A stretch of DNA of 64,000 nt. It comes from Anthoceros angustus (lineage: Eukaryota; Plantae; Anthocerotophyta). The stretch spans positions 2,480,001-2,544,000 of the forward strand of contig VJWM01000025.1 in the NCBI GenBank assembly GCA_010909165.1, given 5' to 3'. The position numbers were made by a program, and so were the translations under genes. Shown here in pieces: positions 20,675-63,057 of this stretch; the first letter of the stretch is position 1; the number at the start of each line of letters is the position of its first letter. The notes under the pieces are model-generated. The model did no database searches and was not told the DNA's origin. It was given only the letters and a program-made list of their open reading frames with translations.

Positions 20675-21908
20675 TCCCCCAGTCTTGATATCTAGTTCAA
20701 AAACAAAGTTCAACAAAATGTGCGAAGTACTCAATTATTAATAAAATAAGATGATTGCAACCTTCACTCCCAAATAATGATACGTGACCATCCGTGGTTA
20801 CTATCATCAAAATCGCAATTGTCAAATTTATAAAGAATAGTAACCAAAATCGTAAATGTCAAATTTATAGAGGCAGCGGAGCATCTAATATAGTATGAAG
20901 AGATGAACTATACATATATTGTACCAATTTAAATTAAATTAAATTAAATCGATACAAATAAATAAATTAAATACTCAATAAATATATAAAAATAGAAAAT
21001 TCTAATACAGAGATAGTTAACCGCGAAGAATAAGAAGCCATGCATGCAAGAAAGAAATTACTTTGGATCTAAGTTAACAAGTTGAGAGGTTAGTGGTAGT
21101 GAGGTTTTGCTTAGAGCTTAAAAACGCAGCTTAAGGTAGTCACTTATGATGAAGTAAGCCTCCCTGTATGAAACATGAGGCTAGCCCTAACAAGTTATTG
21201 CCTAGCACTTGTGCCACACTCGTGTTGGGAGAATTGAGGTGCGTAGAGGCTATGGGAGCTTGGAGTGCTTGTGTGCTTAGAGGGGAGCTTTGAAGAGGAA
21301 ATCGAAGGAAACCAGCGTGCCCTAAAAATATAAGGGTTGGCACACACAACCCGATGTAATATACGTAAGTAAAACGGCTAGAAGCTTACGGAATGAAGAG
21401 AGCTTCCCTACCGTAGGTGCGGGCTCTTGTATCCCAACCTGTCCACAAAATCTTGTTCATCACCTTGTGTTCAGACTTCACCAGACTAACTAGTTTTAAA
21501 GAACTATGGTTAGTTTAAGCTAAACTCCTAAACTCCATCTACTTCTAGCTGCAACTATTTGGATACATCCTCCTTCTTGCCTAAGCTTGCCGAATCTGTG
21601 TCAATTCCTCGATCTGTATTAGACACAAAAACTCAAAGCACAAGGAAATTTTTAAAAATTCACAAAGTCTCAAAACCCAAGGAAACTTTCACAAAATCAT
21701 TGCTATATATGTACCCTTGAGCAAGTGACTTATTACATCGTGGTAATTGCAAGCATCACCAAACGGTTGCATTTTCCAAGGAAAATTTCACAAAATCATT
21801 GCTATGTATGTAGCCCTGAGCACGTGACATATCACAACGTGGTAATTGCAAGCATCACCGAACGGTTGGATTTTTCTACATAGTTGTTTCTGAAATCAAA
21901 AGCGTGCC

Positions 21909-22518
21909 ATGGGCTCAGTGGATGACTTGTCAAAACCAGGGTTGAAGCAAGTAACCACAATTGCTATTGGGGACAAGATCATTCTAAGAGATCGTGGATG
22001 TATCGTACAAGAAATCACAAAAGGTGGAACATTCTATTTTTTGAGGGGGGAGGATATCTTCACGCAACAAGAAGTTCAAGAATATGTTCTATATTCCAAG
22101 CAATGTTACACATTTGAGGTTTTATGTACAAAGTACTCGATGATGTCAACAAGTCAAGTATATGGAGGACCAAAATGCGTCACGTTGAAACATGAACAAA
22201 ATGATAAAAGCGTAGTTCTTCACCTTCCTCGAGATGAGAAACTTGATCGGTGCTTAGAAGATGGATTACAAACGGAAAACACTTATCGATGATCGTATTG
22301 TCCATTTCAAAGGGTATTGAAAATTCCAAAGAGTTTCGTATAGAATATCTATATGACATAAATTCAATAGAACCGCTTTGGAGCGATTCACGGGACCATG
22401 TTAAATATGCATGTTGAAAATGCAATTGGTGGCCACCGGAGAATCAAAGATTAAATCAAACTCACGTGTAAATCTTTGGAAGTACTATTCCTCCATTGAT
22501 AGCGTAATGGATATTTGA
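21909..22518 (+). CDS. Divergent eIF5A-like protein, array copy 1 (open for ~120 codons; later 1-bp indels may be sequencing errors)
   Basis: IGDKIILRDRGCIVQE..GEDIFT..SKQC..EVLCTKY..LPRDEKL..GL(R)NGKHL matches the eIF5A layout. 78/120 aa are identical (manual count) to the intact paralog at 60267. Confidence 0.7.
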
Positions 22519-23424
22519 AGTTGGAGCGTGCAATGTAGTGCGCCAAAGAGTTATCTCATCTCTCAAATGATGCCTCCTCATCACCTAGGTAGGAGAGTGA
22601 GATCCGTGTTTTATGAGTGGTTTTGGTGAGCTATTAGCCTTGTGTAGTCTTATTGTATTGAAATAAAGAGACTATTCACCACAAAATATGTAAAGTTTTA
22701 TATAAATTTGCATCGTATACCTTGGAGCCATTAGGGCCGCTTTTTGAGACATTGTGTTAACACCTTGCGACGTATCGATGGTTCATGGGTCCTTAACCTA
22801 AGCATTATGTTACTCCTAACTCACGATACGATTCGCCTACCATTTGCCGTAGATTGTCGAGCCACAGCGTGGAAGTCCATTATGGTGACTCACTCGTAAG
22901 TTGCCCGCAAGGGTGTGGTTGGTTATGGAAGGAGTGGTCCGGGGTTCTGTTATGCTGGATTTTGCGTACATATGCATTCTTGAACTCTTGCTATAGCAAA
23001 GAGCAACGATGACGTCTTGTCTATGACATCATCCACAGGAGGCTAGCGGGCTATGCCACGGCACTACACCATGCGACCATGAAGGCTAATTACGCACGGG
23101 CTACTCACAATAGTCTTTATGCCCTTTTGGCACGATGGGCCATCCAATTCGACTGCCGTCTTGATTGGCCCAATCGGGCTAATGGCCCGATCAAGTGTGG
23201 AGTGCTCGACTTTCGTAGAACTAGCCAGCTAATGTGCACATTCCGGCTATAAATGTCGTTAGTATCTTATTCAATCCCTCATAGATTGTGAGCAGCAATT
23301 AAGCGTTTAAGATCTACACAAAATATAAGAAAAACCACACGAGTAGACCCGATAATTTTTATCAATAGTGATTAACATCACAAGTTATTCCAAAAATAAA
23401 GGAAGCTTCCTCCGTCTTTCTAAA

Positions 23425-23855
23425 CACCAAAACCCGAGCCCAAGGAAACTTTTACAAATTCATCAAATGTGTTTAAGATACAACAACTCAAAAGGCCAAA
23501 GAAACTTTTACAAATTCATCAAGGTGTCCAAAATTCAAACTCAAAAGCCAAGGAAACTTTTACAAATTCCTCAATAATGTGTATTAGACACGAAACTCAA
23601 AGCACCAGAAAAATTTTATAAATTCACCGATGTGTCTTACACACAAAGTCTCAAAACCCAAGGAAGCTTTCACAAAATCATTGCTATATATGTACCCTTG
23701 AGCAAGTGACTTATTACATCGTGGTAATCGCAAGCATCACTAAACGGTTGCATTTTCCAAGGAAAATTTCACAAAATCATTGCTATGTATGTAGCCGAGC
23801 ACGTGACATATTACAGTGGTAATTGCAAGCATCACCGAACGGTTGGATTTTTCTA
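23425..23855 (+). promoter_or_regulatory. Upstream sub-repeat block of each array unit (unit 2 shown): ~55-bp motif x5 plus a ~99-bp TATA-like module x2
   Basis: CAAGGAAACTTTTACAAATT-like anchors at ~23441, 23497, 23549, 23603, 23659 and 23758. CATTGCTATATATGTA and CATTGCTATGTATGTA occur in the two 99-bp modules. The regulatory role is inferred from position. Confidence 0.55.
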
Positions 23856-23883
23856 CATAGTTGTTTCAAATCAAAAGCGTGCC

Positions 23884-24488
23884 ATGGGCTCGGTGGATGA
23901 CTTGTCAAAACCGGGGTTGAAGCAAGTAACCACAATTGCTATTGGGGACAAGATCATTCTAAGAGATCGTGCATGTATCGTACAAGAAATCACAAAAGGT
24001 GGAACATTCTATTTTTGAGGGGAGGATATCTTCACGCAACAAGAAGTTCAAGAATATGTTCTATATTCCAAGCAATGTTACACATTTGAGGTTTTATGTA
24101 CAAAGTACTCGTGATGTCAACAAGTCAAGTATATGGAGGACCAAAATGCGCCACGTTGAAACATGAACAAAATGATAAAACGTAGTTCTTCACCTTCCTC
24201 GAGATGAGAAACTTGATCGGTGCTTAGAAGATGGATTACGAAACGGAAAACACTTATCGATGATCGTATTGTCCATTTCAAAGGGTATTGAAAATTCCAA
24301 AGAGTTTCGTATAGAATATCTATATGACATAAATTCAATAGAACCGCTTTGGAGCGATTCTGGACCATGTTAAATATGCATGTTGAAAATGCAATTGGTG
24401 GCCACCAGGAGAATCAAAGATTAAATCAAACTCACGTGTAAATCTTTGGAAGTACTATTCCTCCATTGATAGCGTAATGGATATTTGA
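23884..24488 (+). pseudogene. eIF5A-like array copy 2 (frameshifted as assembled)
   Basis: Near-identical to copy 1; indels at homopolymers and CG sites. Confidence 0.55.
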
Positions 24489-25845
24489 AGTTGGAGCGTG
24501 CAATGTAGTGCGCCAAAGAGTTATCTCATCTCTCAAATGATGCCTCCTCATCACCTAGGTAGGAGAGTGAGATCCGTGTTTTATGAGTGGTTTTGGTGAG
24601 CTATTAGCCTTGTGTAGTCTTATTGTATTGAAATAAAGAGACTATTCACCACAAAATATGTAAAGTTTTATATAAATTTGCATTATACCTTGGAGCCATT
24701 AGGGCCAGTTTTTGAGACATTGTGTTAACACCTTACGTGTCAGTGGTTCATGGGTCCTTAACCTAAGCATTATGTTACTCCTAACTTTGTCTGATACGAT
24801 TCGCCTACCATTTGCCGTAGATTGTCGAGCCATAGCGTGGAAGTCCATTATGGTGACTCACTCGTAAGTTGCCCGCAAGGGTGTGGTTGGTTATGGAAGG
24901 AGTGGTCCAGGTTCCTTATCGCCGGATTTTTGCGTACATATGCATTCTTGAACTCTTGCTATAGCAAAGAGCAACAGAGACGCCTTGTCTATGACATCAT
25001 CCACAGGAGGCTAGCGGGCTATGCCCGCACTACGCCATGCGGCCATGAAGGCTAATTACGCAGGCTACTCACAATAGTCTTTATGCCCTTTTGGCACGAT
25101 GGGCCATCCAATTGACTGGCCGTCTTGATTGGCCCAATCGGGCTAATGGCCCGATCGCAGTGTGGAGTGCTCGACTTTCGATAGAACTAGCTAATGTGCA
25201 CATTCCGCTATAAATGTCGTTAGTATCTTATTCAATCCCTCATAGATTGTGAGCAGCAATTAAGCGTTTAAGATCTACACAAAATATAAGAAAAACCACA
25301 CAGTAGACCCGATAATTTTTATCAATAGTGATTAACATCACAAGTTATTCCAAAAATAAAGGAAGCTTCCTCCGTCTTTCTAAACACCAAAACCCGAGCC
25401 CAAGGAAACTTTTACAAATTCATCAAATGTGTTTAAGATACAACAACTCAAAAGGCCAAAGAAACTTTTACAAATTCATCAAGGTGTCCAAAATTCAAAA
25501 ACTCAAAAGCCAAGGAAACTTTTACAAATTCCTCAATAATGTGTATTAGACACGAAAACTCAAAGCACCAGAAAAATTTTATAAATTCACCGATGTGTCT
25601 TACACACAAAGTCTCAAAACCAAGGAAGCTTTCACAAAATCATTGCTATATATGTACCCTTGAGCAAGTGACTTATTACATCGTGGTAATCAAGCATCAC
25701 TAAGCAGTTGCATTTTCCAAGGAAAATTTCACAAAATCATTGCTATGTATGTAGCCCCGAGCACGTGACATATTACAATGGTAATTGCAAGCATCACCGA
25801 ACGGTTGGATTTTTCTACATAGTTGTTTCAAATCAAAAGCGTGCC

Positions 25846-26448
25846 ATGGGCTCGATGGATGACTTGTCAAAACCAGGTTGAAGCAAGTAACCACAATTGC
25901 TATTGGGGACAAGATCATTCTAAGAGATCGTGCATGTATCGTACAAGAAATCACAAAAGGTGGAACATTCTATTTTTGAGGGGAGGATATCTTCACGCAA
26001 CAAGAAGTTCAAGAATATGTTCTATATTCCAAGCAATGTTACACATTTGAGGTTTTATGTACAAAGTACTCGATGATGTCAACAAGTCAAGTATATGGAG
26101 GACCAAAATGCGTCACGTTGAAACATGAACAAAATGATAAAACGTAGTTCTTCACCTTCCTCGAGATGAGAAACTTGATCGGTGCTTAGAAGATGGATTA
26201 CGAAGCGGAAAACACTTATCGATGATCGTATTGTCCATTTCAAAGGGTATTGAAAATTCCAAAGAGTTTCAGATAGAATATCTATATGACATAAATTCAA
26301 TAGAACCGCTTTGGAGCGATTCTGGGACCATGTTAAATATGCATGTTGAAAATGCAATTGGTGGCCACCAGAGAATCAAAGATTAAATCAAACTCACGTA
26401 AATCTTTGGAAGTACTATTCCTCCATTGATAGCGTAATGGATATTTGA
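25846..26448 (+). pseudogene. eIF5A-like array copy 3 (frameshifted as assembled)
   Basis: Near-identical to copy 1. Confidence 0.55.
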
Positions 26449-27812
26449 AGTTGAGCGTGCAATGTAGTGCGCCAAAGAGTTATCTCATCTCTCAAATGAT
26501 GCCTCCTCATCACCTAGGTAGGAGAGTGAGATCCGTGTTTTATGAGTGGTTTTGGTGAGCTATTAGCCTTGTGTAGTCTTATTGTATTGAAATAAAGAGA
26601 CTATTCACCACAAAATATGTAAAGTTTTATATAAATTTGCATCGTATACCTTGGAGCCATTAGGGCCAGTTTTTGAGACATTGTGTTAACACCTTGCGAC
26701 GTGTCAGTGGTTCATGGGTCCTTAACCTAAGCATTATGTTACTCCCTAACTTTGTCACGATACGATTCGGCCTACCATTTGCCGTAGATTGTCGAGCCAC
26801 CTTAGCGTGGAAGTCCATTATGGTGACTCACTGTAAGTTGCCCGCAAGGGTGTGGTTGGTTATGGAAGGAGTGGTCCAGGTTCCTGTTATCGGATTTACT
26901 GCGTACATATGCATTCTTGAACTCTTGCTATAGCAAAGAGCAACGATGAAGCGTCTTATGCGTGACATCATCCACAGGAGGCTAGCGGGCTATGCCTGGC
27001 ACTACACCATGCAGCCATGAAGGCTAATTACGCACGGGCTACTCACAATAGTCTTTATGCCCTTTTGGCACGATGGGCCATCCAATTGCGACCGTCTTGA
27101 TTGGCCCAATCGGGCTAATGGCCCGATCATGAAGTGTGGAGTGCTCGACTTTCGAGAACTAGCCACTAATGTGCACATTCCGGCTATAAATGTCGTTAGT
27201 ATCTTATTCAATCCCTCATAGATTGTGAGCGAATTAAGCGTTTAAGATCTACACAAAATATAAGAAAAACCACACAGTAGACCCGATAGTGATAGTGATT
27301 AACATCACAAGTTATTCCAAAAATAAAGGAAGCTTCCTCCGTCTTTCTAAACACCAAAACCGGGCCCAAGGAAACTTTTACAAATTCATCAAATGTGTTT
27401 AAGATACAACAACTCAAAAGGCCAAAGAAACTTTTACAAATTCATCAAGGTGTCCAAAATTCAAACTCAAAAGCCAAGGAAACTTTTACAAATTCCTCAA
27501 TAATGTGTATTAGACACGAAAACTCAAAGCACCAGAAAAATTTTATAAATTCACCGATGTGTCTTACACAAAGTCTCAAAACCCAAGGAAGCTTTCACAA
27601 AATCATTGCTATATATGTACCCTTGAGCAAGTGACTTATTACATCGTGGTAATCGCAAGCATCACTAAAGCAGTTGCATTTTCCAAGGAAAATTTCACAA
27701 AATCATTGCTATGTATGTAGCCCCGAGCACGTGACATATTACATAGTAATTGCAAGCATCACCGAACGGTTGGATTTTTCTACATAGTTGTTTACGAAAT
27801 CAAAAGCGTGCC

Positions 27813-28413
27813 ATGGGCTCGATGGATGACTTGTCAAAACCGGTTGAAGCAAGTAACCACAATTGCTATTGGGGACAAGATCATTCTAAGAGATCGTGCA
27901 TGTATCGACAAGAAATCACAAAAGGTGGAACATTCTATTTTTGAGGGGAGGATATCTTCACGCAACAAGAAGTTCAAGAATATGTTCTATATTCCAAGCA
28001 ATGTTACACATTTGAGGTTTTATGTACAAAGTACTCGATGATGTCAACAAGTCAAGTATATGGAGGACCAAAATGCGTCACGTTGAAACATGAACAAAAT
28101 GATAAAACGTAGTTCTTCACCTTCCTCGAGATGAGAAACTTGATCGGTGCTTAGAAGATGGATTACGAACGGAAAACACTTATCGATGATCGTATTGTCC
28201 ATTTCAAAGGGTATTGAAAATTCCAAAGAGTTTCGTATAGAATATCTATATGACATAAATTCAATAGAACCGCTTTGGAGCGATTACGGGACCATGTTAA
28301 ATATGCATGTTGAAAATGCAATTGGTGGCCACGGAGAATCAAAGATTAAATCAAACTCACGTGTAAATCTTTGGAAGTACTATTCCTCCATTGATAGCGT
28401 AATGGATATTTGA
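27813..28413 (+). pseudogene. eIF5A-like array copy 4 (frameshifted as assembled)
   Basis: Near-identical to copy 1; the C-terminal half is open (NGKHLSMIVL...VNLWKYY). Confidence 0.55.
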
Positions 28414-29761: not shown

Positions 29762-30361
29762 ATGGGCTCGATGGATGACTTGTCAAAACCGGGGTTGAAG
29801 CAAGTAACCACAATTGCTATTGGGGACAAGATCATTCTAAGAGATCGTGCATGTATCGTATGAAATCACAAAAGGTGGAACATTCTATTTTTGAGGGGAG
29901 GATATCTTCACGCAACAAGAAGTTCAAGAATATGTTCTATATTCCAAGCAATGTTACACATTTGAGGTTTTATGTACAAAGTACTGATGTCAACAAGTCA
30001 AGTATATGGAGGACCAAAATGCGTCACGTTGAAACATGAACAAAATGATAAAACGTAGTTCTTCACCTTCCTCGAGATGAGAAACTTGATCGGTGCTTAG
30101 AAGATGGATTACGAAACGGAAAACACTTATCGATGATCGTATTGTCCATTTCAAAGGGTATTGAAAATTCCAAAGAGTTTCGTATAGAATATCTATATGA
30201 CATAAATTCAATAGAACCGCTTTGGAGCGATTACGGGACCATGTTAAATATGCATGTTGAAAATGCAATTGGTGGTACTCGGAGAATCAAAGATTAAATC
30301 AAACTCACGTGTAAATCTTTGGAAGTACTATTCCTCCATTGATAGCGTAATGGATATTTGA
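29762..30361 (+). pseudogene. eIF5A-like array copy 5 (frameshifted as assembled)
   Basis: Near-identical to copy 1. Confidence 0.55.
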
Positions 30362-31702: not shown

Positions 31703-32305
31703 ATGGGCTCGATGGATGACTTGTCAAAACCGGGGTTGAAGCAAGTAACCACAATTGCTATTGGGGACAAGATCATTCTAAGAGATCGTGCATGTATCGT
31801 ACAAGAAATCACAAAAGGTGGAACATTCTATTTTTGAGGGGAGGATATCTTCACGCAACAAGAAGTTCAAGAATATGTTCTATATTCCAAGCAATGTTAC
31901 ACATTTGAGGTTTTATGTACAAAGTACTCGATGATGTCAACAAGTCAAGTATATGGAGGACCAAAATGCGCCACGTTGAAACATGAACAAAATGATAAAA
32001 CGTAGTTCTTCACCTTCCTCGAGATGAGAAACTTGATCGGTGCTTAGAAGATGGATTACTAAACGGAAAACACTTATCGATGATCGTATTGTCCATTTCA
32101 AAGGGTATTGAAAATTCCAAAGAGTTTCGTATAGAATATCTATATGACATAAATTCAATAGAACCGCTTTGGAGCGATTCACGGACCATGTTAAATATGC
32201 ATGTTGAAAATGCAATTGGTACTGTGAGAATCAAAGATTAAATCAAACTCACGTGTAAATCTTTGGAAGTACTATTCCTCCATTGATAGCGTAATGGATA
32301 TTTGA
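31703..32305 (+). pseudogene. eIF5A-like array copy 6 (frameshifted as assembled)
   Basis: Near-identical to copy 1. Confidence 0.55.
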
Positions 32306-33647
32306 AGTTGGAGCGTGCAATGTAGTGCGCCAAAGAGTTATCTCATCTCTCAAATGATGCCTCCTCATCACCTAGGTAGGAGAGTGAGATCCGTGTTTTA
32401 TGAGTGGTTTTGGTGAGCTATTAGCCTTGTGTAGTCTTATTGTATTGAAATAAAGAGACTATTCACCACAAAATATGTAAAGTTTTATATAAATTTGCAT
32501 AGTCTACCTTGGAGCCATTAGGGCTAGGTTTTTGAGACATTGTGTTAACACCTTGCGGCGTCGATTGGTTCATGGGTCCTTAACCTAAGCATTATGTTAC
32601 TCCCTAACTTTGTCTGATACGATTACCTACCATTTGCCGAGATTGTCGAGCCAGAGCGTGAAGTCCATTATGGTGACTCACTCGTAAGTTGCCCAAGGGT
32701 GTGGTTGGTTATGGAAGGAGTGGTCCAGGTTCCCGTTCGCCTGGATTACTGCGTACATATGCATTCTTGAACTCTTGCTATAGCAAAGAGACGCCTTGAC
32801 GTCTTGTCGTGACATCATCCCGGAGGCTAGCGGGCTATGCCTGGCACTACACCATGCAGCCATGAAGGCTAATTACGCAGGGCTACTCACAATAGTCTTT
32901 ATGCCCTTTTGGCACGATGGGCCATCCAATGTGACTGTCTTGATTGGCAATCACAATATCATCCGGTGTGGAGTGCTCATTTCGAGAACTAGCCGACTAA
33001 TGTGCACATTCCGGCTATAAATGTCGTTAGTATCTTATTCAATCCCTCATAGATTGTGAGCAGCAATTAAGCGTTTAAGATCTACACAAAATATAAGAAA
33101 AACCACACCGAGTAGACCGATAGTGATAGTGATTAACATCACAAGTTATTCCAAAAATAAAGAGAAAGCTTCCTCCGCCTTTCTAAACACCAAAACCCGA
33201 GCCCAAGGAAACTTTTACAAATTCATCAAATGTGTTTAAGATACAACAACTCAAAAGGCCAAAGAAACTTTTACAAATTCATCAAGGTGTCCAAAATTCA
33301 AAACTCAAAAGCCAAGGAAACTTTTACAAATTCCTCAATAATGTGTATTAGACACGAAAACTCAAAGCACCAGAAAAATTTTATAAATTCACCGATGTGT
33401 CTTACACACAAAGTCTCAAAACCCAAGGAAGCTTTCACAAAATCATTGCTATATATGTACCCTTGAGCAAGTGACTTATTACATCGTGGTAATCGCAAGC
33501 ATCACTAAACGTTGCATTTTCCAAGGAAAATTTCACAAAATCATTATGTATGTAGCCCCGAGCACGTGACATATTACGTGGTAATTGCAAGCATCACCGA
33601 ACGGTTGGATTTTTCTACATAGTTGTTTCTCAAATCAAAAGCGTGCC

Positions 33648-34243
33648 ATGGGCTGGATGACTTGTCAAAACCGGGGTTGACAAGTAACCACAATTGCTAT
33701 TGGGGACAAGATCATTCTAAGAGATCGTGCATGTATCGTACAAGAAATCACAAAAGGTGGAACATTCTATTTTTGAGGGGAGGATATCTTCACGCAACAA
33801 GAAGTTCAAGAATATGTTCTATATTCCAAGCAATGTTACACATTTGAGGTTTTATGTACAAAGTACTCGATGATGTCAACAAGTCAAGTATATGGAGGAC
33901 CAAAATGCGTCACGTTGAAACATGAACAAAATGATAAAACGTAGTTCTTCACCTTCCTCGAGATGAGAAACTTGATCGGTGCTTAGAAGATGGATTACTA
34001 AACGGAAAACACTTATCGATGATCGTATTGTCCATTTCAAAGGGTATTGAAAATTCCAAAGAGTTTCGTATAGAATATCTATATGACATAAATTCAATAG
34101 AACCGCTTTGGAGCGATTCGGACCATGTTAAATATGCATGTTGAAAATGCAATTGGTGGCCACCGGAGAATCAAAGATTAAATCAAACTCACGTGTAAAT
34201 CTTTGAAGTACTATTCTCCATTGATAGCGTAATGGATATTTGA
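33648..34243 (+). pseudogene. eIF5A-like array copy 7 (frameshifted as assembled)
   Basis: Near-identical to copy 1. Confidence 0.55.
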
Positions 34244-35594: not shown

Positions 35595-36198
35595 ATGGGC
35601 TCGATGGATGACTTGTCAAAACCAGGTTGAAGCAAGTAACCACAATTGCTATTGGGGACAAGATCATTCTAAGAGATCGTGCATGTATCGTACAGAAATC
35701 ACAAAAGGTGGAACATTCTATTTTTGAGGGGAGGATATCTTCACGCAACAAGAAGTTCAAGAATATGTTCTATATTCCAAGCAATGTTACACATTTGAGG
35801 TTTTATGTACAAAGTACTCGATGATGTCAACAAGTCAAGTATATGGAGGACCAAAATGCGCCACGTTGAAACATGAACAAAATGATAAAACGTAGTTCTT
35901 CACCTTCCTCGAGATGAGAAACTTGATCGGTGCTTAGAAGATGGATTACTAAACGGAAAACACTTATCGATGATCGTATTGTCCATTTCAAAGGGTATTG
36001 AAAATTCCAAAGAGTTTCGTATAGAATATCTATATGACATAAATTCAATAGAACCGCTTTGGAGCGATTCTGGGACCATGTTAAATATGCATGTTGAAAA
36101 TGCAATTGGTGGCCACCGGAGAATCAAAGATTAAATCAAACTCACGTGTAAATCTTTGGAAGTACTATTCCTCCATTGATAGCGTAATGGATATTTGA
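35595..36198 (+). pseudogene. eIF5A-like array copy 8 (frameshifted as assembled)
   Basis: Near-identical to copy 1. Confidence 0.55.
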
Positions 36199-37548: not shown

Positions 37549-38152
37549 ATGGGCTCGATGGATGACTTGTCAAAACCGAGGTTGAAGCAAGTAACCACAA
37601 TTGCTATTGGGGACAAGATCATTCTAAGAGATCGTGCATGTATCGTATACAAGAAATCACAAAGGTGGAACATTCTATTTTTTGAGGGGAGGATATCTTC
37701 ACGCAACAAGAAGTTCAAGAATATGTTCTATATTCCAAGCAATGTTACACATTTGAGGTTTTATGTACAAAGTACTCGATGATGTCAACAAGTCAAGTAT
37801 ATGGAGGACCAAAATGCGTCACGTTGAAACATGAACAAAATGATAAAACGTAGTTCTTCACCTTCCTCGAGATGAGAAACTTGATCGGTGCTTAGAAGAT
37901 GGATTACAAACGGAAAACACTTATCGATGATCGTATTGTCCATTTCAAAGGGTATTGAAAATTCCAAAGAGTTTCGTATAGAATATCTATATGACATAAA
38001 TTCAATAGAACCGCTTTGGATTCTGGGACCATGTTAAATATGCATGTTGAAAAATGCAATTGGTGGCCACCGGAGAATCAAAGATTAAATCAAACTCACG
38101 TGTAAATCTTTGGAAGTACTATTCCTCCATTGATAGCGTAATGGATATTTGA
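37549..38152 (+). pseudogene. eIF5A-like array copy 9 (frameshifted as assembled)
   Basis: Near-identical to copy 1. Confidence 0.55.
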
Positions 38153-39503: not shown

Positions 39504-40108
39504 ATGGGCTCGATGGATGACTTGTCAAAACCGTGGTTGAAGCAAGTAACCACAATTGCTATTGGGGACAAGATCATTCTAAGAGATCGTGCATGTATCG
39601 TACAAGAAATCACAAAAGGTGGAACATTCTATTTTTGAGGAGGATATCTTCACGCAACAAGAAGTTCAAGAATATGTTCTATATTCCAAGCAATGTTACA
39701 CATTTGAGGTTTTATGTACAAAGTACTCGATGATGTCAACAAGTCAAGTATATGGAGGACCAAAATGCGTCACGTTGAAACATGAACAAAATGATAAAAC
39801 GTAGTTCTTCACCTTCCTCGAGATGAGAAACTTGATCGGTGCTTAGAAGATGGATTACTAAACGGAAAACACTTATCGATGATCGTATTGTCCATTTCAA
39901 AGGGTATTGAAAATTCCAAAGAGTTTCGTATAGAATATCTATATGACATAAATTCAATAGAACCGCTTTGGAGCGATTCACGGACCATGTTAAATATGCA
40001 TGTTGAAAAATGCAATTGGTGGCCACCGGAGAATCAAAGATTAAATCAAACTCACGTGTAAATCTTTGGAAGTACTATTCCTCCATTGATAGCGTAATGG
40101 ATATTTGA
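39504..40108 (+). pseudogene. eIF5A-like array copy 10 (frameshifted as assembled)
   Basis: Near-identical to copy 1. Confidence 0.55.
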
Positions 40109-41455: not shown

Positions 41456-42058
41456 ATGGGCTCGATGGATGACTTGTCAAAACCAGGTTGAAGCAAGTAA
41501 CCACAATTGCTATTGGGGACAAGATCATTCTAAGAGATCGTGCATGTATCGTACAAGAAATCACAAAAGGTGGAACATTCTATTTTTGAGGGGAGGATAT
41601 CTTCACGCAACAAGAAGTTCAAGAATATGTTCTATATTCCAAGCAATGTTACACATTTGAGGTTTTATGTACAAAGTACTCGATGATGTCAACAAGTCAA
41701 GTATATGGAGGACCAAAATGCGTCACGTTGAAACATGAACAAAATGATAAAAGCGTAGTTCTTCACCTTCCTCGAGATGAGAAACTTGATCGGTGCTTAG
41801 AAGATGGATTACGAACGGAAAACACTTATCGATGATCGTATTGTCCATTTCAAAGGGTATTGAAAATTCCAAAGAGTTTCGTATAGAATATCTATATGAC
41901 ATAAATTCAATAGAACCGCTTTGGAGCGATTACGGGACCATGTTAAATATGCATGTTGAAAATGCAATTGGTGGCCAGGAGAATCAAAGATTAAATCAAA
42001 CTCACGTGTAAATCTTTGGAAGTACTATTCCTCCATTGATAGCGTAATGGATATTTGA
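41456..42058 (+). pseudogene. eIF5A-like array copy 11 (frameshifted as assembled)
   Basis: Near-identical to copy 1. Confidence 0.55.
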
Positions 42059-43408: not shown

Positions 43409-44009
43409 ATGGGCTCGATGGATGACTTGTCAAAACCGGGGTTGAAGCAAGTAACCACAATTGCTATTGGGGACAAGATCATTCTAAGAGATCGTGCATG
43501 TATCGTACAAGAAATCACAAAAGGTGGAACATTCTATTTTTGAGGAGGATATCTTCACGCAACAAGAAGTTCAAGAATATGTTCTATATTCCAAGCAATG
43601 TTACACATTTGAGGTTTTATGTACAAAGTACTCGATGATGTCAACAAGTCAAGTATATGGAGGACCAAAATGCGTCACGTTGAAACATGAACAAAATGAT
43701 AAAACGTAGTTCTTCACCTTCCTCGAGATGAGAAACTTGATCGGTGCTTAGAAGATGGATTACGAACGGAAAACACTTATCGATGATCGTATTGTCCATT
43801 TCAAAGGGTATTGAAAATTCCAAAGAGTTTCGTATAGAATATCTATATGACATAAATTCAATAGAACCGCTTTGGAGCGATTCACGGACCATGTTAAATA
43901 TGCATGTTGAAAATGCAATTGGTGGCCACCGGAGAATCAAAGATTAAATCAAACTCACGTAAATCTTTGGAAGTACTATTCCTCCATTGATAGCGTAATG
44001 GATATTTGA
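43409..44009 (+). pseudogene. eIF5A-like array copy 12 (frameshifted as assembled)
   Basis: Near-identical to copy 1. Confidence 0.55.
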
Positions 44010-45341
44010 AGTTGGAGCGTGCAATGTAGTGCGCCAAAGAGTTATCTCATCTCTCAAATGATGCCTCCTCATCACCTAGGTAGGAGAGTGAGATCCGTGT
44101 TTTATGAGTGGTTTTGGTGAGCTATTAGCCTTGTGTAGTCTTATTGTATTGAAATAAAGAGACTATTCACCACAAAATATGTAAAGTTTTATATAAATTT
44201 GCATCGTATACCTTGGAGCCATTAGGGCCGCTTTTGAGACATTGTGTTAACACCTTGCGACGTGTCATGGTTCATGGGTCCTTAACCTAAGCATTATGTT
44301 ACTCCCTAACTGTCTGATACGATTATACCATTTGCCGTAGATTGTCGAGCCACAGCGTGGAAGTCCATTATGGTGACTCACTCGTAAGTTGCCCGCAAGG
44401 GTGTGGTTGGTTATGGAAGGAGTGGTCCGGGGTTCTGTTATCGCTGGATTACTGCGTACATATGCATTCTTGAACTCTTGCTATAGCAAAGAGCAACGAT
44501 GAGCGTCTTATGCGTGACATCATCCACAGGAGGCTAGCGGGCTGCCTCGGCACTACACCATGCATGAAGGCTAATTACACGGGCTACTCACAATAGTCTT
44601 TATGCCTTTTGGCGATGGGCCATCCAATTCGACTGCCGTCTTGATTGGCCCAATCGGGCTAATGTGATAAGTGTGGAGTGCTCATTTCGAGAACTAGCCT
44701 AATGTGCACATTCCGGCTATAAATGTCGTTAGTATCTTATTCAATCCCTCATAGATTGTGAGCAGCAATTAAGCGTTTAAGATCTACACAAAATATAAGA
44801 AAAACCACACGAGTAGACCCATAATTTTTATCAATAGTGATTAACATCACAAGTTATTCCAAAAATAAAGGAAAGCTTCCTCCGCCTTTCTAAACACCAA
44901 AACCCAAGGAAACTTTTACAAATTCATCAAATGTGTTTAAGATACAACAACTCAAAAGAAACTTTTACAAATTCATCAAGGTGTCCAAAATTCAAAACTC
45001 AAAAGCCAAGGAAACTTTTACAAATTCCTCAATAATGTGTATTAGACACGAAAACTCAAAGCACCAGAAAAATTTTATAAATTCACGATGTGTCTTACAC
45101 ACAAAGTCTCAAAACCCAAGGAAGCTTTCACAAAATCATTGCTATATATGTACCCTTGAGCAAGTGACTTATTACATCGTGGTAATCGCAAGCATCACTA
45201 AGCGGTTGCATTTTCCAAGGAAAATTTCACAAAATCATTGCTATGTATGTAGCACGAGCACGTGACATATTACAGTGGTAATTGCAAGCATCACCGAGCG
45301 GTTGGATTTTTCTACATAGTTGTTTAAATCAAAAGCGTGCC

Positions 45342-45941
45342 ATGGGCTCGTGGATGACTTGTCAAAACCAGGTTGAAGCAAGTAACCACAATTGCTATTG
45401 GGGACAAGATCATTCTAAGAGATCGTGCATGTATCGTACAAGAAATCACAAAAGGTGGAACATTCTATTTTTGAGGGGAGGATATCTTCACGCAACAAGA
45501 AGTTCAAGAATATGTTCTATATTCCAAGCAATGTTACACATTTGAGGTTTTATGTACAAAGTACTCGATGATGTCAACAAGTCAAGTATATGGAGGACCA
45601 AAATGCGTCACGTTGAAACATGAACAAAATGATAAAAAATAGTTCTTCACCTTCCTCGAGATGAGAAACTTGATCGGTGCTTAGAAGATGGATTAAACGG
45701 AAAACACTTATCGATGATCGTATTGTCCATTTCAAAGGGTATTGAAAATTCCAAAGAGTTTAGATAGAATATCTATATGACATAAATTCAATAGAACCGC
45801 TTTGGAGCGATTACGGGACCATGTTAAATATGCATGTTGAAAATGCAATTGGTGGCCACCGGAGAATCAAAGATTAAATCAAACTCACGTGTAAATCTTT
45901 GGAAGTACTATTCCTCCATTGATAGCGTAATGGATATTTGA
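45342..45941 (+). pseudogene. eIF5A-like array copy 13 (frameshifted as assembled)
   Basis: Near-identical to copy 1. Confidence 0.55.
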
Positions 45942-47273
45942 AGTTGGAGCGTGCAATGTAGTGCGCCAAAGAGTTATCTCATCTCTCAAATGATGCCTCC
46001 TCATCACCTAGGTAGGAGAGTGAGATCCGTGTTTTATGAGTGGTTTTGGTGAGCTATTAGCCTTGTGTAGTCTTATTGTATTGAAATAAAGAGACTATTC
46101 ACCACAAAATATGTAAAGTTTTATATAAATTTGCATCAGATACCTTGGAGCCATTAGGGCCGCTTTTTGAGACATTGTGTTAACACCTTGCGACGTGTCG
46201 GTGGTTCATGGGTCCTTAACCTAAGCATTATGTTACTCCCTAACTGTCTGATCGATTACCATTTGCCGTGGTGATTGAGCGTGGAAGTCCATTATGGTGA
46301 CTCACTCGTAAGTTGCCCGCAAGGGTGTGGTTGGTTATGGAAGGAGTGGTCCAGGTTCTGTTATCGCTGGATTTGCGTACATATGCATTCTTGAACTCTT
46401 GCTATAGCAAAGAGCAACGATGACGCCTTGTCTGTGACATCATCCACAGGAGGCTAGCGGGCTATGCCCCGGCACTACACCATGCGCCATGAAGGCTAAT
46501 TACGCACGGGCTACTCACAATAGTCTTTATGCCCGCACGATGGGCCATCCAATTGCGACGTCTTGATTGGCCCAATCGGGCTAATGGCCCGATCGTGAAG
46601 TGTGGAGTGCTCGACTTCGATAGAACTAGCTAATGTGCACATTCTATAAATGTCGTTAGTATCTTATTCAATCCCTCATAGATTGTGAGCGAATTAAGCG
46701 TTTAAGATCTACACAAAATATAAGAAAAACCACGAGTAGACCCGATAATTTTTATCAATAGTGATTAACATCACAAGTTATTCCAAAAATAAAGGAAGCT
46801 TCCTCCGCCTTTCTAAACACCAAAACCCGAGCCCAAGGAAACTTTTACAAATTCATCAAATGTGTTTAAGATACAACAACTCAAAAGGCCAAAGAAACTT
46901 TTACAAATTCATCAAGGTGTCCAAAATTCAAAAACTCAAAAGCCAAGGAAACTTTTACAAATTCCTCAATAATGTGTATTAGACACGAAAACTCAAAGCA
47001 CCGGAAAATTTTATAAATTCACCGATGTGTCTTACACACAAAGTCTCAAAACCCAAGGAAGCTTTCACAAAATCATTGCTATATATGTACCCTTGAGCAA
47101 GTGACTTATTACATCGTGGTAATCAAGCATCACGGTTGCATTTTCCAAGGAAAATTTCACAAAATCATTGCTATGTATGTAGCCCGAGCACGTGACATAT
47201 TACAGTGGTAATTGCAAGCATCACCGAACGGTTGGATTTTTCTACATAGTTGTTTCGAAATCAAAAGCGTGCC

Positions 47274-47880
47274 ATGGGCTCGTGGATGACTTGTCAAAAC
47301 CGAGGGTTGAAGCAAGTAACCACAATTGCTATTGGGGACAAGATCATTCTAAGAGATCGTGCATGTATCGTACAAGAAATCACAAAAGGTGGAACATTCT
47401 ATTTTTTGAGGGGAGGATATCTTCACGCAACAAGAAGTTCAAGAATATGTTCTATATTCCAAGCAATGTTACACATTTGAGGTTTTATGTACAAAGTACT
47501 CGATGATGTCAACAAGTCAAGTATATGGAGGACCAAAATGCGCCACGTTGAAACATGAACAAAATGATAAAACGTAGTTCTTCACCTTCCTCGAGATGAG
47601 AAACTTGATCGGTGCTTAGAAGATGGATTACGAACGGAAAACACTTATCGATGATCGTATTGTCCATTTCAAAGGGTATTGAAAATTCCAAAGAGTTTCA
47701 GATAGAATATCTATATGACATAAATTCAATAGAACCGCTTTGGAGCGATTACGGGACCATGTTAAATATGCATGTTGAAAATGCAATTGGTGGCCACCAG
47801 GAGAATCAAAGATTAAATCAAACTCACGTGTAAATCTTTGGAAGTACTATTCCTCCATTGATAGCGTAATGGATATTTGA
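47274..47880 (+). pseudogene. eIF5A-like array copy 14 (frameshifted as assembled)
   Basis: Near-identical to copy 1. Confidence 0.55.
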
Positions 47881-49280
47881 AGTTGGAGCGTGCAATGTAG
47901 TGCGCCAAAGAGTTATCTCATCTCTCAAATGATGCCTCCTCATCACCTAGGTAGGAGAGTGAGATCCGTGTTTTATGAGTGGTTTTGGTGAGCTATTAGC
48001 CTTGTGTAGTCTTATTGTATTGAAATAAAGAGACTATTCACCACAAAATATGTAAAGTTTTATATAAATTTGCATCAGTATACCTTGGAGCCATTAGGGC
48101 CGTTTTTGAGACATTGTGTTAACACCTTGCGACGATCTGGTTCATGGGTCCTTAACCTAAGCATTATGTTACTCCCTAACTGTCTGATACGATTCGCCTA
48201 CCATTTGCCGTAGATTGTCGAGCCTGTGGCGTGGAAGTCCATTATGGTGACTCACTCGTAAGTTGCCCGCAAGGGTGTGGTTGGTTATGGAAGGAGTGGT
48301 CCAGGTTCTGTTATCGCTGGATTTACATATGCATTCTTGAACTCTTGCTATAGCAAAGAGCAACGATGACGTCTTGTCGTGACATCATCCTCGGAGGCTA
48401 GCGGGCTATGCCTGGCACTACACCATGCACCATGAAGGCTAATTACGCACGGCTACTCACAATAGTCTTTATGCCCTTTTGGCGATGGGCCATCCAATTC
48501 GGCGACCGTCTTGATTGGTAATGGCTCGATCGCGAAGTGTGGAGTGCTCGAGAGAACTAGCCACTAATGTGCACATTCCGGCTATAAATGTCGTTAGTAT
48601 CTTATTCAATCCCTCATAGATTGTGAGCAGCAATTAAGCGTTTAAGATCTACACAAAATATAAGAAAAACCACACCGAGTAGACCCGATAATTTTTATCA
48701 ATAGTGATTAACATCACAAGTTATTCCAAAAATAAAGGAAGCTTCCCTGTCTTTCTAAACACCAAAACCCGAGCCCAAGGAAACTTTTACAAATTCATCA
48801 AATGTGTTTAAGATACAACAACTCAAAAGGCCAAAGAAACTTTTACAAATTCATCAAATGTGTTTAAGATACAACAACTCAAAAGACCAAAGAAACTTTT
48901 ACAAATTCATCAAGGTGTCCAAAATTCAAAAACTCAAAAGCCAAGGAAACTTTTACAAATTCCTCAATAATGTGTATTAGACACGAAAACTCAAAAGCAC
49001 CAGAAAAATTTTATAAATTCACCGATGTGTCTTACACACAAAGTCTCAAAACCCAAGGAAGCTTTCACAAAATCATTGCTATATATGTACCCTTGAGCAA
49101 GTGACTTATTACATCGTGGTAATCGCAAGCATCACTAAACGGTTGCATTTTCCAAGGAAAATTTCACAAAATCATTGCTATGTATGTAGCCCCGAGCACG
49201 TGACATATTACAGTGGTAATTGCAAGCATCACCGAACGGTTGGACTTTTCTACATAGTTGTTTCAAATCAAAAGCGTGCC

Positions 49281-49882
49281 ATGGGCTCGATGGATGACTT
49301 GTCAAAACCGTGGTTGAAGCAAGTAACCACAATTGCTATTGGGGACAAGATCATTCTAAGAGATCGTGGATGTATCGACAAGAAATCACAAAAGGTGGAA
49401 CATTCTATTTTTGAGGGGAGGATATCTTCACGCAACAAGAAGTTCAAGAATATGTTCTATATTCCAAGCAATGTTACACATTTGAGGTTTTATGTACAAA
49501 GTACTCGATGATGTCAACAAGTCAAGTATATGGAGGACCAAAATGCGCCACGTTGAAACATGAACAAAATGATAAAACGTAGTTCTTCACCTTCCTCGAG
49601 ATGAGAAACTTGATCGGTGCTTAGAAGATGGATTACGAACGGAAAACACTTATCGATGATCGTATTGTCCATTTCAAAGGGTATTGAAAATTCCAAAGAG
49701 TTTCGTATAGAATATCTATATGACATAAATTCAATAGAACCGCTTTGGAGCGATTCGGGACCATGTTAAATATGCATGTTGAAAATGCAATTGGTGGCCA
49801 CCAGAGAATCAAAGATTAAATCAAACTCACGTGTAAATCTTTGAAGTACTATTCCTCCATTGATAGCGTAATGGATATTTGA
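49281..49882 (+). pseudogene. eIF5A-like array copy 15 (frameshifted as assembled)
   Basis: Near-identical to copy 1. Confidence 0.55.
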
Positions 49883-50215
49883 AGTTGGAGCGTGCAATGT
49901 AGTGCGCCAAAGAGTTATCTCATCTCTCAAATGATGCCTCCTCATCACCTAGGTAGGAGAGTGAGATCCGTGTTTTATGAGTGGTTTTGGTGAGCTATTA
50001 GCCTTGTGTAGTCTTATTGTATTGAAATAAAGAGACTATTCACCACAAAATATGTAAAGTTTTATATAAATTTGCATAGTCTACCTTGGAGCCATTAGGG
50101 CTAGGTTTTTGAGACATTGTGTTAACACCTTGCGACGTATCAGTGGTTCATGGGTTTGCAACTTGTAGTTCTAGCGCCGTCAACTTCATCAGAGCCTGCG
50201 TTTCACACCTTGTGA

Positions 50216-54460: not shown

Positions 54461-54504
54461 TTCCCATCGTTTTTTCCCCTTTTAGCTGTATTGCGCCATG
54501 AAAG

Positions 54505-62594: not shown

Positions 62595-62958
62595 GCCGTG
62601 GAGGGCACCAGCTGGATGACTTGTCACTATCATAGCATCGTCATCGCCATGTTCATGGCCATCACCTTGTTGCTTGCACATATACGCTCCGCATGAAGGA
62701 GGCCCGCCATCCCGCCAATTTGTATTCCTTCTAATTCACCTGCCAACTACACTTTGTTACCAACCGTACGTGCTCAGGAATTGCGACGACCGGTCGTGGT
62801 AAGAGGTGAAGCAACGGATAATGTTACATGGTTGAGGTTTTACTTCCCAAGTACTCAGCGATGTCAACAAATCAAGCATCTCAAGGACCGAAATGGGTTA
62901 CGTTGAGACATGAACACAATGATAAAAACCTAGTTTTTCAGCTTCCTCGTTATGAGAA
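62595..62958 (+). pseudogene. Chimeric duplicated fragment: ABCG 5' region (~59598-59844) fused to an internal eIF5A-like segment (~60461-60599)
   Basis: atcccgccaatttgtattcc and ccggtcgtggtaagaggt are shared with 59741-59832; atgttacatggttgaggttttac...cagcttcctcgt is shared with 60461-60590. Confidence 0.85.
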
Positions 62959-62994
62959 ATGCTGTTCAAATGGGAGCAACGACACTTAGGGAAC

Positions 62995-63057
62995 CTATCA
63001 TCAACGTCATGATCATTGGGAAGGACTATCATCAACTTCATGATCATTGGGAAGGAC
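62995..63057. repeat. 31-bp tandem duplication
   Basis: ctatcatcaac(g/t)tcatgatcattgggaagga occurs x2. Confidence 0.85.

What the first reader, a model, noticed from the sequence alone, without database searches (positions are those of the whole stretch)
21615..50155. 28.5-kb tandem amplification of a hypusine-loop-less eIF5A-like gene (15 copies)
Seen: each ~1955-bp unit holds a complete gene-shaped module (upstream repeats with a TATA-like box, a ~200-codon intronless frame, a downstream AATAAA), and the units are nearly identical, which implies recent amplification or concerted evolution. Known: eIF5A is normally an extremely conserved low-copy gene, and fungal HEX-1 is the precedent for an eIF5A paralog that lost hypusination and became a high-abundance self-assembling protein. 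Inference: amplification of a non-canonical eIF5A fold suggests a stoichiometric role. Options are a structural polymer or plug, a ribosome or deoxyhypusine-synthase decoy in gametes or spores, or a selfish amplicon. I know of no described plant system like this.
Basis: partly seen in the sequence, partly recalled or inferred. Interest (0 to 1): 0.88.

Follow-up and report, generated by a model that had tools for sequence, protein, structure and literature searches.

The report
Methylated tandem array of eIF5A-like genes
A non-seed land plant carries 15 head-to-tail copies of a 1.95-kb unit, each with a promoter and a 197-codon gene distantly derived from translation factor eIF5A; the array is real, but most apparent breaks in the genes look like sequencing noise at methylated DNA, so whether any copy is used is still open.

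Summary
The array is real: 21612-50155 holds 14 full units (1932-2007 bp), a leading promoter piece and a trailing 875-bp piece, which makes 15 gene copies. As assembled, no copy has the ~200-codon frame open; the longest is 127 codons, in unit 1.

The breaks do not look biological:
- 62 of 63 length differences lie within 4 nt of a CG/CHG or at a homopolymer.
- Variation falls from about 12-15% per site at CG/CHG to 1% at 9 nt or more away.
- This variation is unrelated to the units' genealogy.

That is the footprint of long-read base-calling errors at methylated cytosines. With X at each break, all 15 copies follow the codon grid of an intact 197-codon paralog at 60267-60860, down to the same stop.

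dN/dS between array and paralog is 0.35-0.41, so the family encodes real proteins. Descent from eIF5A has weak to moderate support (profile E=0.0016 to Arabidopsis eIF5A-2). The hypusination motif is not conserved.

No reads could be examined, so copy number, true frames and expression are untested. The scan has already found the same kind of methylated, gene-bearing array elsewhere in this genome (TFIIB-, ELF1- and PLATZ-like).

The parts
21612..50155 (+). Whole tandem array: leading promoter-repeat piece, 14 full units (1932-2007 bp) and a trailing 875-bp piece. GC is about 40%, against 45-64% in the flanks.
   Evidence: blastn of unit 1 against the window; unit table; composition; left edge read, right edge
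21612..21908 (+). Leading partial unit: the last 54-bp repeat, two 99-bp repeats with a TATA-like box (TATATATG at 21704) and the 5' leader of copy 1
21909..22499 (+). Gene copy 1, at the array edge. It is open for 127 codons (21909-22292) and then has a -1 and a +1 length difference, both beside CG sites.
22662..22667 (+). AATAAA about 160 bp after the stop of copy 1; it recurs in every unit
22650..23400 (+). CpG-rich 3' part of unit 1, with no recognisable gene, transposon end or RNA family. It is the noisiest part of every unit: 32 of 35 CpG sites vary.
23437..23851 (+). Promoter repeats in front of copy 2: 54-56-bp repeats (4 copies), then 99-bp repeats (2 copies) with a TATA-like box at 23685. 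The same arrangement precedes every copy.
23884..24469 (+). Gene copy 2 (4 length breaks against the paralog in codons 1-165)
25846..26429 (+). Gene copy 3 (3 breaks)
27813..28394 (+). Gene copy 4 (6 breaks)
29762..30342 (+). Gene copy 5 (4 breaks)
31703..32286 (+). Gene copy 6 (2 breaks, plus the only substitution-type stop, near codon 175 in a noisy spot)
33644..34224 (+). Gene copy 7 (start region garbled; 4 breaks)
35595..36179 (+). Gene copy 8 (4 breaks)
37549..38133 (+). Gene copy 9 (7 breaks)
39504..40089 (+). Gene copy 10 (3 breaks)
41456..42039 (+). Gene copy 11 (3 breaks)
43409..43990 (+). Gene copy 12 (4 breaks)
45342..45922 (+). Gene copy 13 (6 breaks)
47274..47861 (+). Gene copy 14 (6 breaks); this unit also has one extra 56-bp promoter repeat
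49281..49863 (+). Gene copy 15, in the trailing partial unit that ends at 50155 (5 breaks)
60267..60860 (+). Intact single-copy paralog: 197 codons, intronless, 78.6% nucleotide and 64% protein identity to the array type. A TATATAA lies at 60158, and one copy of the 99-bp promoter element at about 60108-60257. It sits head-to-head with an ABCG transporter gene.
62636..62959 (+). Chimeric remnant: a copy of the ABCG 5' end (83% to 59665-59844) joined directly to the middle of the eIF5A-like frame (93% to 60460-60599)

Best explanation
This is a young tandem amplification of one member of a lineage-specific, fast-evolving gene family descended from eIF5A. Unequal crossing-over between the short promoter repeats is the likely mechanism; that step is inferred.

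Each 1.95-kb unit keeps the full gene design: TATA-bearing promoter repeats, an intronless frame of 196-197 codons and a 3' region.

The encoded protein keeps the two-domain eIF5A layout. Its hypusine hairpin is shortened and degenerate, and it has a tail of about 65 residues. It therefore cannot do eIF5A's hypusine-dependent job at the peptidyl-transferase centre. It more likely acts as a hypusine-free binder of the ribosomal E site/L1 stalk or of RNA (inferred).

The array DNA carries repeat-type CG and CHG methylation over promoter, frame and spacer. This is inferred from the error footprint. The array is therefore probably silent in the tissue that was sequenced, and the working gene at this locus is probably the single-copy paralog at 60267-60860.

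Most or all of the frameshifts and the TGA seen in the assembled copies are base-calling or polishing errors at methylated cytosines and homopolymers, not decay. The true copies are probably 98-99% or more identical, and many may be intact.
For: Array and module.

Noise footprint:
- The fraction of units differing from the majority is 0.118 at CG, 0.148 at CHG, 0.024 at CHH and 0.019 at A/T.
- For non-CG sites it falls 0.108, 0.054, 0.032, 0.015, 0.010 at 1, 2, 3-4, 5-8 and 9+ nt from a CG.
- Nearly half of the changes at CG are deletions.
- There are 321 indel events against 464 substituted cells, and Ts/Tv is about 1.
- Distances from near-CG columns do not correlate with distances from the 55 clean substitution columns (Mantel r=0.015, p=0.47). 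Units 12-14, nearly identical at clean sites, are among the most different at CG sites.
- 62 of 63 length differences in codons 1-165 lie in CG/CHG halos or homopolymers, which cover 51% of columns (P=2e-17).
- One homopolymer site shows four length states among otherwise near-identical units.
- Flanking single-copy frames with 67-153 CpG stay open for 1.5-2 kb.
- Nanopore consensus errors are known to concentrate at 5mC motifs and then at homopolymers (PMC6591954).

Gene reality:
- All 15 copies are colinear with the paralog to the same TGA, and none has a substitution-type stop in codons 1-165.
- dN/dS is 0.35-0.41 over about 190 codons, in core and tail alike, p<=3e-4.

eIF5A descent.

A hypusine-free eIF5A-like fold that binds uL1 at the E site is known in Nmd3 (PMC6795138).
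Against: - No reads were seen, so methylation, copy number, true frames and expression are all inferred.
- Two lesions are shared by most copies: the -3 at the T/G runs that creates a TGA (14 of 15 copies) and the -1 at AAAAGCG (13 of 15 copies). They could be real and inherited. Copy 15, next to the right flank, still has breaks 300-570 bp from the edge.
- I do not know the sequencing platform.
- eIF5A homology rests on E-values of 1e-3 to 1e-2, with no Pfam hit and a poor model (pLDDT 44).
- Methylation in one tissue does not exclude expression elsewhere.
Confidence: 0.5

Rival explanations
1. The breaks are real. The array is a decaying satellite built from an already dead copy: a premature TGA at codon 45 and a frameshift near codon 101 are shared by most units. 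Only the single-copy paralog is a gene.
For: No copy is open as assembled. The majority sequence carries one stop and two frameshifts. The -3 and -1 lesions occur in 14 and 13 of 15 copies. Units 1 and 11, which lack the -1, are also close at clean sites.
Against: Indels are almost confined to CG/CHG halos and homopolymers (P=2e-17). They do not follow the units' genealogy. An indel-to-substitution ratio of about 0.7 and a halo of about 4 nt around CG are not known mutation patterns. There is no substitution-type stop in about 2,475 codons of the first 165 positions.
Confidence: 0.2
2. One reading: the array is an active dosage device, with 15 intact genes expressed together to make large amounts of a hypusine-free eIF5A-fold protein. 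The protein would be a structural polymer, a ribosome or deoxyhypusine-synthase decoy, or a selfish amplicon. Expression might be limited to a stage such as male gametogenesis, where methylation is reset.
For: Every copy keeps promoter, frame and stop. The family is under purifying selection. There are precedents for co-amplified, sex-organ-expressed genes in Marchantia V-chromosome repeats (reference title).
Against: The inferred CG+CHG methylation covers the promoter and the frame. Notes from other agents on sister arrays of this genome report no transcripts; these notes are unchecked here. No expression data were seen here. The C-terminus is not a peroxisome signal, and there is no HEX-1 sequence hit.
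Confidence: 0.2
3. The copy number is an assembly artefact: a few real units were over-expanded, or many more were collapsed.
For: The region is clearly poorly polished, and there was no depth check.
Against: The units carry structured differences at clean sites: units 12-14 form one group and units 1, 2, 4 and 11 another. One unit has a 56-bp extra repeat. This is expected from distinct, spanned units. An array of 28.5 kb is within long-read length (own knowledge).
Confidence: 0.07
4. The eIF5A resemblance is chance, and the family is an orphan of other or de novo origin.
For: Pfam gives no hit. An exhaustive phmmer search of 1.8 billion representatives gives only a spurious repeat protein. 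Structure Z-scores of about 5 are tied with generic OB folds. The Atlas search with the array type gives nothing.
Against: Four searches, which are only partly independent, put eIF5A on top. The alignment is colinear and spans both domains in the right order, and it improves with a profile, from E 0.036 to 0.0016.
Confidence: 0.18

Closest known systems
Eukaryotic translation factor eIF5A (Pfam PF21485 + PF01287)
   Same: The alignment is colinear over the N-terminal barrel and the C-terminal OB domain. The best PDB hit is Arabidopsis eIF5A-2. The conserved DIFT strand follows the hairpin.
   Different: Pfam does not detect it. The hairpin is 6 residues shorter and lacks the invariant hypusination motif. 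There is an extra tail of about 65 residues. The gene is intronless, multi-copy and fast-evolving (64% identity between paralogs 10 kb apart), whereas eIF5A is among the most conserved eukaryotic proteins (own knowledge).
Fungal HEX-1/HexA, the Woronin-body protein derived from eIF5A by duplication (PMC6371581)
   Same: Both are eIF5A-derived paralogs that no longer depend on hypusine.
   Different: There is no C-terminal peroxisome targeting signal (the tail ends in RLH). HEX-1 does not appear among the PDB sequence hits at E<=10. The structure match has Z of only 4.4. Self-assembly is untested.
eIF5A-like domain of the 60S export adapter Nmd3 (PMC6795138)
   Same: It is a hypusine-free eIF5A-type fold that works by binding uL1 on the L1 stalk at the E site, which is a plausible mode of action for this family.
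   Different: Nmd3 is a large, conserved, single-copy protein. No sequence relation was seen here.
Protein-coding genes co-amplified with repeats on the Marchantia polymorpha V (Y) chromosome, such as ORF162 (bioRxiv 10.1101/2021.02.08.430207; Ishizaki 2002, title)
   Same: A bryophyte genome in which a complete small gene is amplified together with its repeat unit.
   Different: Those repeats are sex-chromosome-specific, reach hundreds of copies and are expressed in male organs. This array sits among ordinary genes, and its chromosome and expression are unknown.
Drosophila Stellate / Su(Ste) arrays (own knowledge, not checked in papers here)
   Same: Tandem arrays of a divergent paralog of a housekeeping subunit (CK2 beta), normally silenced; the protein crystallises when derepressed.
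   Different: That is an animal, piRNA-based system. There is no evidence here for a suppressor array or small RNAs.
Other gene-bearing arrays of this same genome (scan notes s1-270530 TFIIB-like, s1-262041 ELF1-like, s1-278028 PLATZ-like, s1-300138, s1-291238)
   Same: Units of 2-5 kb, each with a very divergent copy of a regulatory or core factor, and breaks read as noise at methylated cytosines. The TFIIB-like note also reports an intronless copy with a TATA box.
   Different: The genes and units are different, and I saw no shared sequence (a blank here means little). I did not check those claims.

Membership tests
eIF5A (canonical translation factor) | Significant sequence match to the eIF5A N- and C-domain families | tested here: inconclusive
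   Pfam gives no hit even at E<=10. PDB phmmer gives E 0.036-0.95, with the top three all eIF5A. The profile gives E 0.0016 to 3hks, colinear 16-132 against 32-150.
eIF5A (canonical translation factor) | Invariant hypusination loop (S-T-S-K-T-G-K-H-G-H-A-K) with the modified lysine | tested here: not met
   In the HMMER alignments the hairpin is 6 residues shorter. The paralog has TKAGKFYF and the array copies have TKGGTFYF. The H-G-H-A-K part is absent, and the aligned lysine is Thr in the array.
eIF5A (canonical translation factor) | SH3-like barrel plus OB fold | tested here: inconclusive
   The AlphaFold2 models have pLDDT 39 and 44. Residues 66-155 model as a small beta barrel that matches the aIF5A/eIF5A/EF-P C-domains at Z 4.7-5.4, tied with generic OB folds. 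Foldseek ranks 1-2 are eIF5A, but with TM 0.29.
eIF5A (canonical translation factor) | Strong conservation and low copy number | tested here: not met
   There are 15 array copies, a paralog and a fragment in one window. Array type and paralog share 64% protein identity. No relative was found among 15 billion proteins.
HEX-1 / Woronin-body major protein | C-terminal PTS1 peroxisome signal | tested here: not met
   The paralog and the array type end in ...YYRLH / ...YY-LH, not in an S/A/C-K/R/H-L/M tripeptide (own knowledge of the consensus). HexA carries such a signal.
HEX-1 / Woronin-body major protein | Sequence relation to HEX-1 closer than to eIF5A | tested here: not met
   There is no HEX-1 chain among the PDB sequence hits at E<=10. 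The structure row 8qlu has Z 4.4, below the eIF5A rows.
HEX-1 / Woronin-body major protein | Self-assembly into a crystalline lattice | not testable with these tools
   It needs purified protein or in-cell imaging.
Gene-bearing tandem amplicon (macrosatellite with a complete gene per unit) | Head-to-tail units of uniform length, each with promoter, frame and 3' signal | tested here: met
Gene-bearing tandem amplicon (macrosatellite with a complete gene per unit) | High identity between units (recent amplification or homogenisation) | tested here: met
   94.5-97.5% as assembled. About 1% per-site deviation away from CG sites. The consensus shows no CpG depletion: 71 observed against 80 expected.
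Gene-bearing tandem amplicon (macrosatellite with a complete gene per unit) | Copy number confirmed by read depth or spanning reads | not tested
Sex-chromosome ampliconic genes (Marchantia V-type) | Location on a sex-limited chromosome and expression in sexual organs | not testable with these tools
   The chromosome identity is unknown. The flanks hold ordinary genes: choline-transporter-like, xyloglucan fucosyltransferase, GDSL lipase, ABCG and cyclin.

The most novel reading that the evidence does not exclude
This array is one member of a genome-wide class: methylated macrosatellites that each carry a very divergent paralog of a gene-expression factor (eIF5A-, TFIIB-, ELF1- and PLATZ-like). 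The class would be kept intact by selection. It would be released from silencing only in a special stage such as spermatogenesis, or be engaged in a Stellate-like genetic conflict. That would amount to a parallel, amplified 'second set' of core factors in a bryophyte-grade plant.
Probability: 0.15. Interest if true: 0.85.

Novelty: new variant of a known kind. Interest (0 to 1): 0.45.

Why it matters
If the copies are intact, this would be the first plant case I could find of an eIF5A-derived, hypusine-independent protein family, and it is amplified 15-fold. It would be a natural experiment on what the eIF5A fold can do without hypusine.

Together with sister arrays in the same genome, it points to a recurrent process that amplifies divergent paralogs of regulatory and core gene-expression factors and then methylates them.

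There is also a practical lesson. In this assembly, frameshifts inside repeats cannot be taken at face value. The CG/CHG halo test used here separates noise from decay without reads, and it doubles as an indirect read-out of methylation.

Tried and rejected
- Pfam on the paralog and on copy 1: nothing. My first multi-query call failed on a wrong frame.
- Word-indexed homolog search with both proteins: nothing. Neither exact sequence is in the collection.
- Exhaustive phmmer: only P0001, a 682-aa low-complexity repeat protein matched in 11 stretches, which I rejected as spurious.
- Viral contigs and both metagenome scans: no relative. The alignment query was unusable. There is thus no support for a giant-virus or other viral origin.
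- Atlas search with the array type: no usable hit.
- AlphaFold2, alone and with the small family alignment: pLDDT 39 and 44. Fold matches are therefore only consistent, not evidential.
- Spacer. There is no Pfam family above noise in its ORFs, no Rfam family or tRNA, and no terminal inverted repeats or CACTA ends. It has no copy elsewhere in the window.
- Edge polishing. Unit 1 is cleanest, which fits short-read polishing that reaches only the array edges. Copy 15 still has breaks near the right edge, so I do not rely on this idea.
- Literature. Ishizaki 2002 is not held in the library.
- Findings search by sequence and by relatives: blank, which means nothing.
- Consensus. The majority consensus of the units was built only inside scripts, to count differences.

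Full report
**1. The observation**

Tandem Repeats Finder shows short repeat blocks recurring every ~1.95 kb between 21.6 and 49.3 kb. The whole stretch is a flat ~40% GC island between 45-64% GC flanks.

blastn of the first unit against the window gives 14 full-length matches at 94.5-96.6% identity. It also gives a 248-bp leading match and a trailing 875-bp match at 97.5% that ends at 50155.

- Units are 1932-2007 bp long; unit 14 has one extra 56-bp repeat.
- Each unit holds four to five 54-56-bp repeats, then two 99-bp repeats with a TATA-like box, a short leader, the frame, and an AATAAA ~160 bp after the stop.
- So the array and its 15 gene-shaped modules are real features of the assembled sequence.

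**2. The frame as assembled**

No array copy has the ~200-codon frame open. Unit 1 has 127 codons (21909-22292). All other copies switch frame two to seven times. The majority sequence of the units itself has a TGA and two frameshifts.

Ten kilobases downstream, at 60267-60860, lies an intact 197-codon paralog, 78.6% identical in DNA. It has its own TATATAA and one copy of the 99-bp promoter element. A chimeric remnant lies at 62636-62959.

**3. Are the breaks real?**

Several independent features say mostly not.

(a) Among the 14 full units there are 321 indel events against 464 substituted cells, and transitions equal transversions. Over the 363 nt where copy 1 is open, copy 1 and the paralog differ by 77 substitutions and no indel.

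(b) Differences pile up at methylatable cytosines. The fraction of units differing from the majority, by site class:

| Site class | Fraction differing |
|---|---|
| CG | 0.118 |
| CHG | 0.148 |
| CHH | 0.024 |
| A/T | 0.019 |
| non-CG, 1 nt from a CG | 0.108 |
| non-CG, 2 nt from a CG | 0.054 |
| non-CG, 3-4 nt from a CG | 0.032 |
| non-CG, 5-8 nt from a CG | 0.015 |
| non-CG, 9+ nt from a CG | 0.010 |

Nearly half of the changes at CG are deletions, which deamination does not produce. A halo of about 4 nt around a modified base is what a pore reading several bases at a time would give (own knowledge).

(c) The near-CG variation is not inherited. Distances computed from 200 near-CG columns do not correlate with distances from the 55 clean substitution columns (Mantel r=0.015, p=0.47). 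Units 12-14 differ at only 4-7 clean sites but at 76-87 near-CG columns.

(d) In codons 1-165 of the 15 copies there are 63 length differences from the paralog:
- 43 lie within 4 nt of a CG/CHG;
- 19 lie at homopolymers of four or more;
- 1 lies elsewhere.

Half of the columns are 'elsewhere', so P=2e-17.

(e) One T-run/G-run site shows four different length states among otherwise near-identical units.

(f) Flanking single-copy frames with 67-153 CpG and over 120 CHG each stay open for 1.5-2 kb. The noise is therefore specific to the array.

Nanopore consensus errors are known to concentrate at 5-methylcytosine motifs and then at homopolymers (PMC6591954). I do not know the platform used for this genome. 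The inference is that the array was assembled from noisy long reads, could not be polished because short reads multi-map, and is methylated at CG and CHG throughout.

The noise is strongest in the CpG-rich 3' spacer (32 of 35 CpG sites vary). It is also present in the frame (12 of 24) and the promoter repeats (7 of 10).

**4. What the copies look like under the noise**

I read the copies on the paralog's codon grid with X at every length break. All 15 are colinear with all 197 codons and end at the same TGA. None has a substitution-type stop in codons 1-165, and only copy 6 has one later, at a noisy spot.

Between array copies and the paralog, dS is ~0.5 and dN/dS is 0.35-0.41. This holds equally in the eIF5A-like core (codons 1-132) and in the tail (133-197), with p between 2e-5 and 3e-4 for the whole frame.

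The family therefore encodes real proteins. The founder of the array was a working gene for most of the time since it split from the paralog.

I cannot decide from the assembly whether the two lesions shared by most copies are real. These are the -3 that makes a TGA at codon 45 and the -1 near codon 101. Both sit in error-prone contexts, and copy 1 (plus copy 11 for the second) lacks them.

**5. What the protein is**

Searches that found nothing:
- Pfam.
- The word-indexed search of 5.8 billion proteins.
- An exhaustive phmmer search of 1.8 billion representatives, which found only a spurious repeat protein.
- Viral and metagenome scans.

Evidence for eIF5A:
- Against solved structures, the paralog's three best sequence hits are all eIF5A (E 0.036-0.95).
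- A small family profile made from the paralog and open pieces of array copies (A1) improves the hit to Arabidopsis eIF5A-2. The hit is E=0.0016, colinear from profile positions 16-132 to eIF5A residues 32-150, so it spans both domains.
- Language-model features put two Streptophyta eIF5A clusters at ranks 2-3, at 0.82/0.79, which is a lead only.
- Foldseek on a poor model ranks two eIF5A entries first, at E 7e-3 but TM 0.29.
- An aligner that does not lean on Foldseek finds an OB-like barrel at residues 66-155. It matches aIF5A, eIF5A and EF-P C-domains at Z 4.7-5.4, tied with generic OB folds.

I take eIF5A descent as likely (~0.8) but not proven.

In the alignments the hypusine hairpin is six residues shorter and the invariant G-K-H-G-H-A-K is gone. 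The residue aligned with the modified lysine is Lys in the paralog and Thr in the array type. A tail of ~65 residues is added.

**6. Lineage and context**

The flanks encode a choline-transporter-like protein, a xyloglucan fucosyltransferase, a GDSL lipase, an ABCG transporter and a cyclin-T-like protein.

The fucosyltransferase is 42-49% identical to lycophyte, liverwort and moss proteins. It is 64% identical to one unnamed Logan contig. The organism is therefore a non-seed land plant that is poorly represented in the protein collections. 'No homolog found' is thus weak evidence that the family is narrow.

Notes from this scan (AI notes, unchecked by me) list two more eIF5A-like copies elsewhere in the genome. 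They also list several other arrays of 2-5-kb units carrying very divergent TFIIB-, ELF1-, PLATZ- and U-box-type genes. Other agents reached the same noise-at-methylated-cytosine reading for those arrays, and for two of them saw no transcripts. I had derived the noise reading before seeing those notes.

**7. How it most likely works**

Shown: a real array of complete gene modules; a selected protein family; an error footprint tied to CG/CHG.

Inferred:
- The array arose by unequal crossing-over, probably helped by the promoter repeats.
- It is young or homogenised. Away from CG sites the units deviate by ~1%, and the consensus shows no CpG depletion (71 observed against 80 expected).
- It is methylated like a silenced repeat, and so is probably silent in the sequenced tissue. 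The paralog would then be the working gene.
- For the protein, loss of the hypusine tip rules out eIF5A's catalytic-centre role. The remaining fold could still dock at the E site/L1 stalk, as the hypusine-free eIF5A-like domain of Nmd3 does (PMC6795138), or it could bind RNA.

A dosage or stage-specific role is possible but has no positive evidence.

**8. Novelty and limits**

Tandemly amplified complete genes are known. In bryophytes they include genes co-amplified with V-chromosome repeats in Marchantia (reference title). An eIF5A-derived, hypusine-independent, amplified plant family was not found in my paper searches. I rate this a new variant of a known kind.

The main limit is that no reads could be examined. 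Copy number, methylation, true frames and expression all rest on inference from the assembly.

Noticed in passing
window 62636-62959: A chimeric remnant. A copy of the ABCG gene's 5' end (83% to 59665-59844) is fused directly to the middle of the eIF5A-like frame (93% to 60460-60599). About 615 bp that separate these two pieces at the parent locus are missing. This is a partial segmental duplicate of the head-to-head ABCG/paralog pair.
   Followed up: partly
window 61469-62323 (+): An intronless 284-codon cyclin-T-like frame (Cyclin_N plus CycT2-like_C) at 45% GC sits between the intact eIF5A-like paralog and its remnant, inside the same AT-rich island. It may be another retro- or duplicated copy of a core factor.
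   Followed up: no
window 57615-59710 (-): An ABCG half-transporter (ABC_tran plus ABC2_membrane) lies head-to-head with the paralog, with 556 bp between the two start codons. Its two long frames overlap by 7 bp in different frames, which means a short intron or one more assembly slip.
   Followed up: no
window 54229-55361: A block of unrelated short tandem repeats (114 bp x2, 42 bp x8.6, 113 bp x1.8, 65 bp x2) lies in the right flank, with no Pfam match in the overlapping ORFs.
   Followed up: no
window 47274-49280 (unit 14): Unit 14 carries one extra 56-bp promoter repeat (2007 bp against ~1950), a real length variant that marks the units as distinct.
   Followed up: partly
window 20001-50155 and 60001-64000: Both eIF5A-like loci sit in ~40% GC islands, whereas the neighbouring genes are 57-64% GC. 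The family and its surroundings have a composition unlike the host's ordinary genes.
   Followed up: no
L001 (Logan contig SRR33208241_3611), 3239-4891: This is the closest relative of the flanking fucosyltransferase (64% identity). It comes from an unnamed sequencing run. Its 9.4-kb contig shows no eIF5A-like gene among the called genes.
   Followed up: partly
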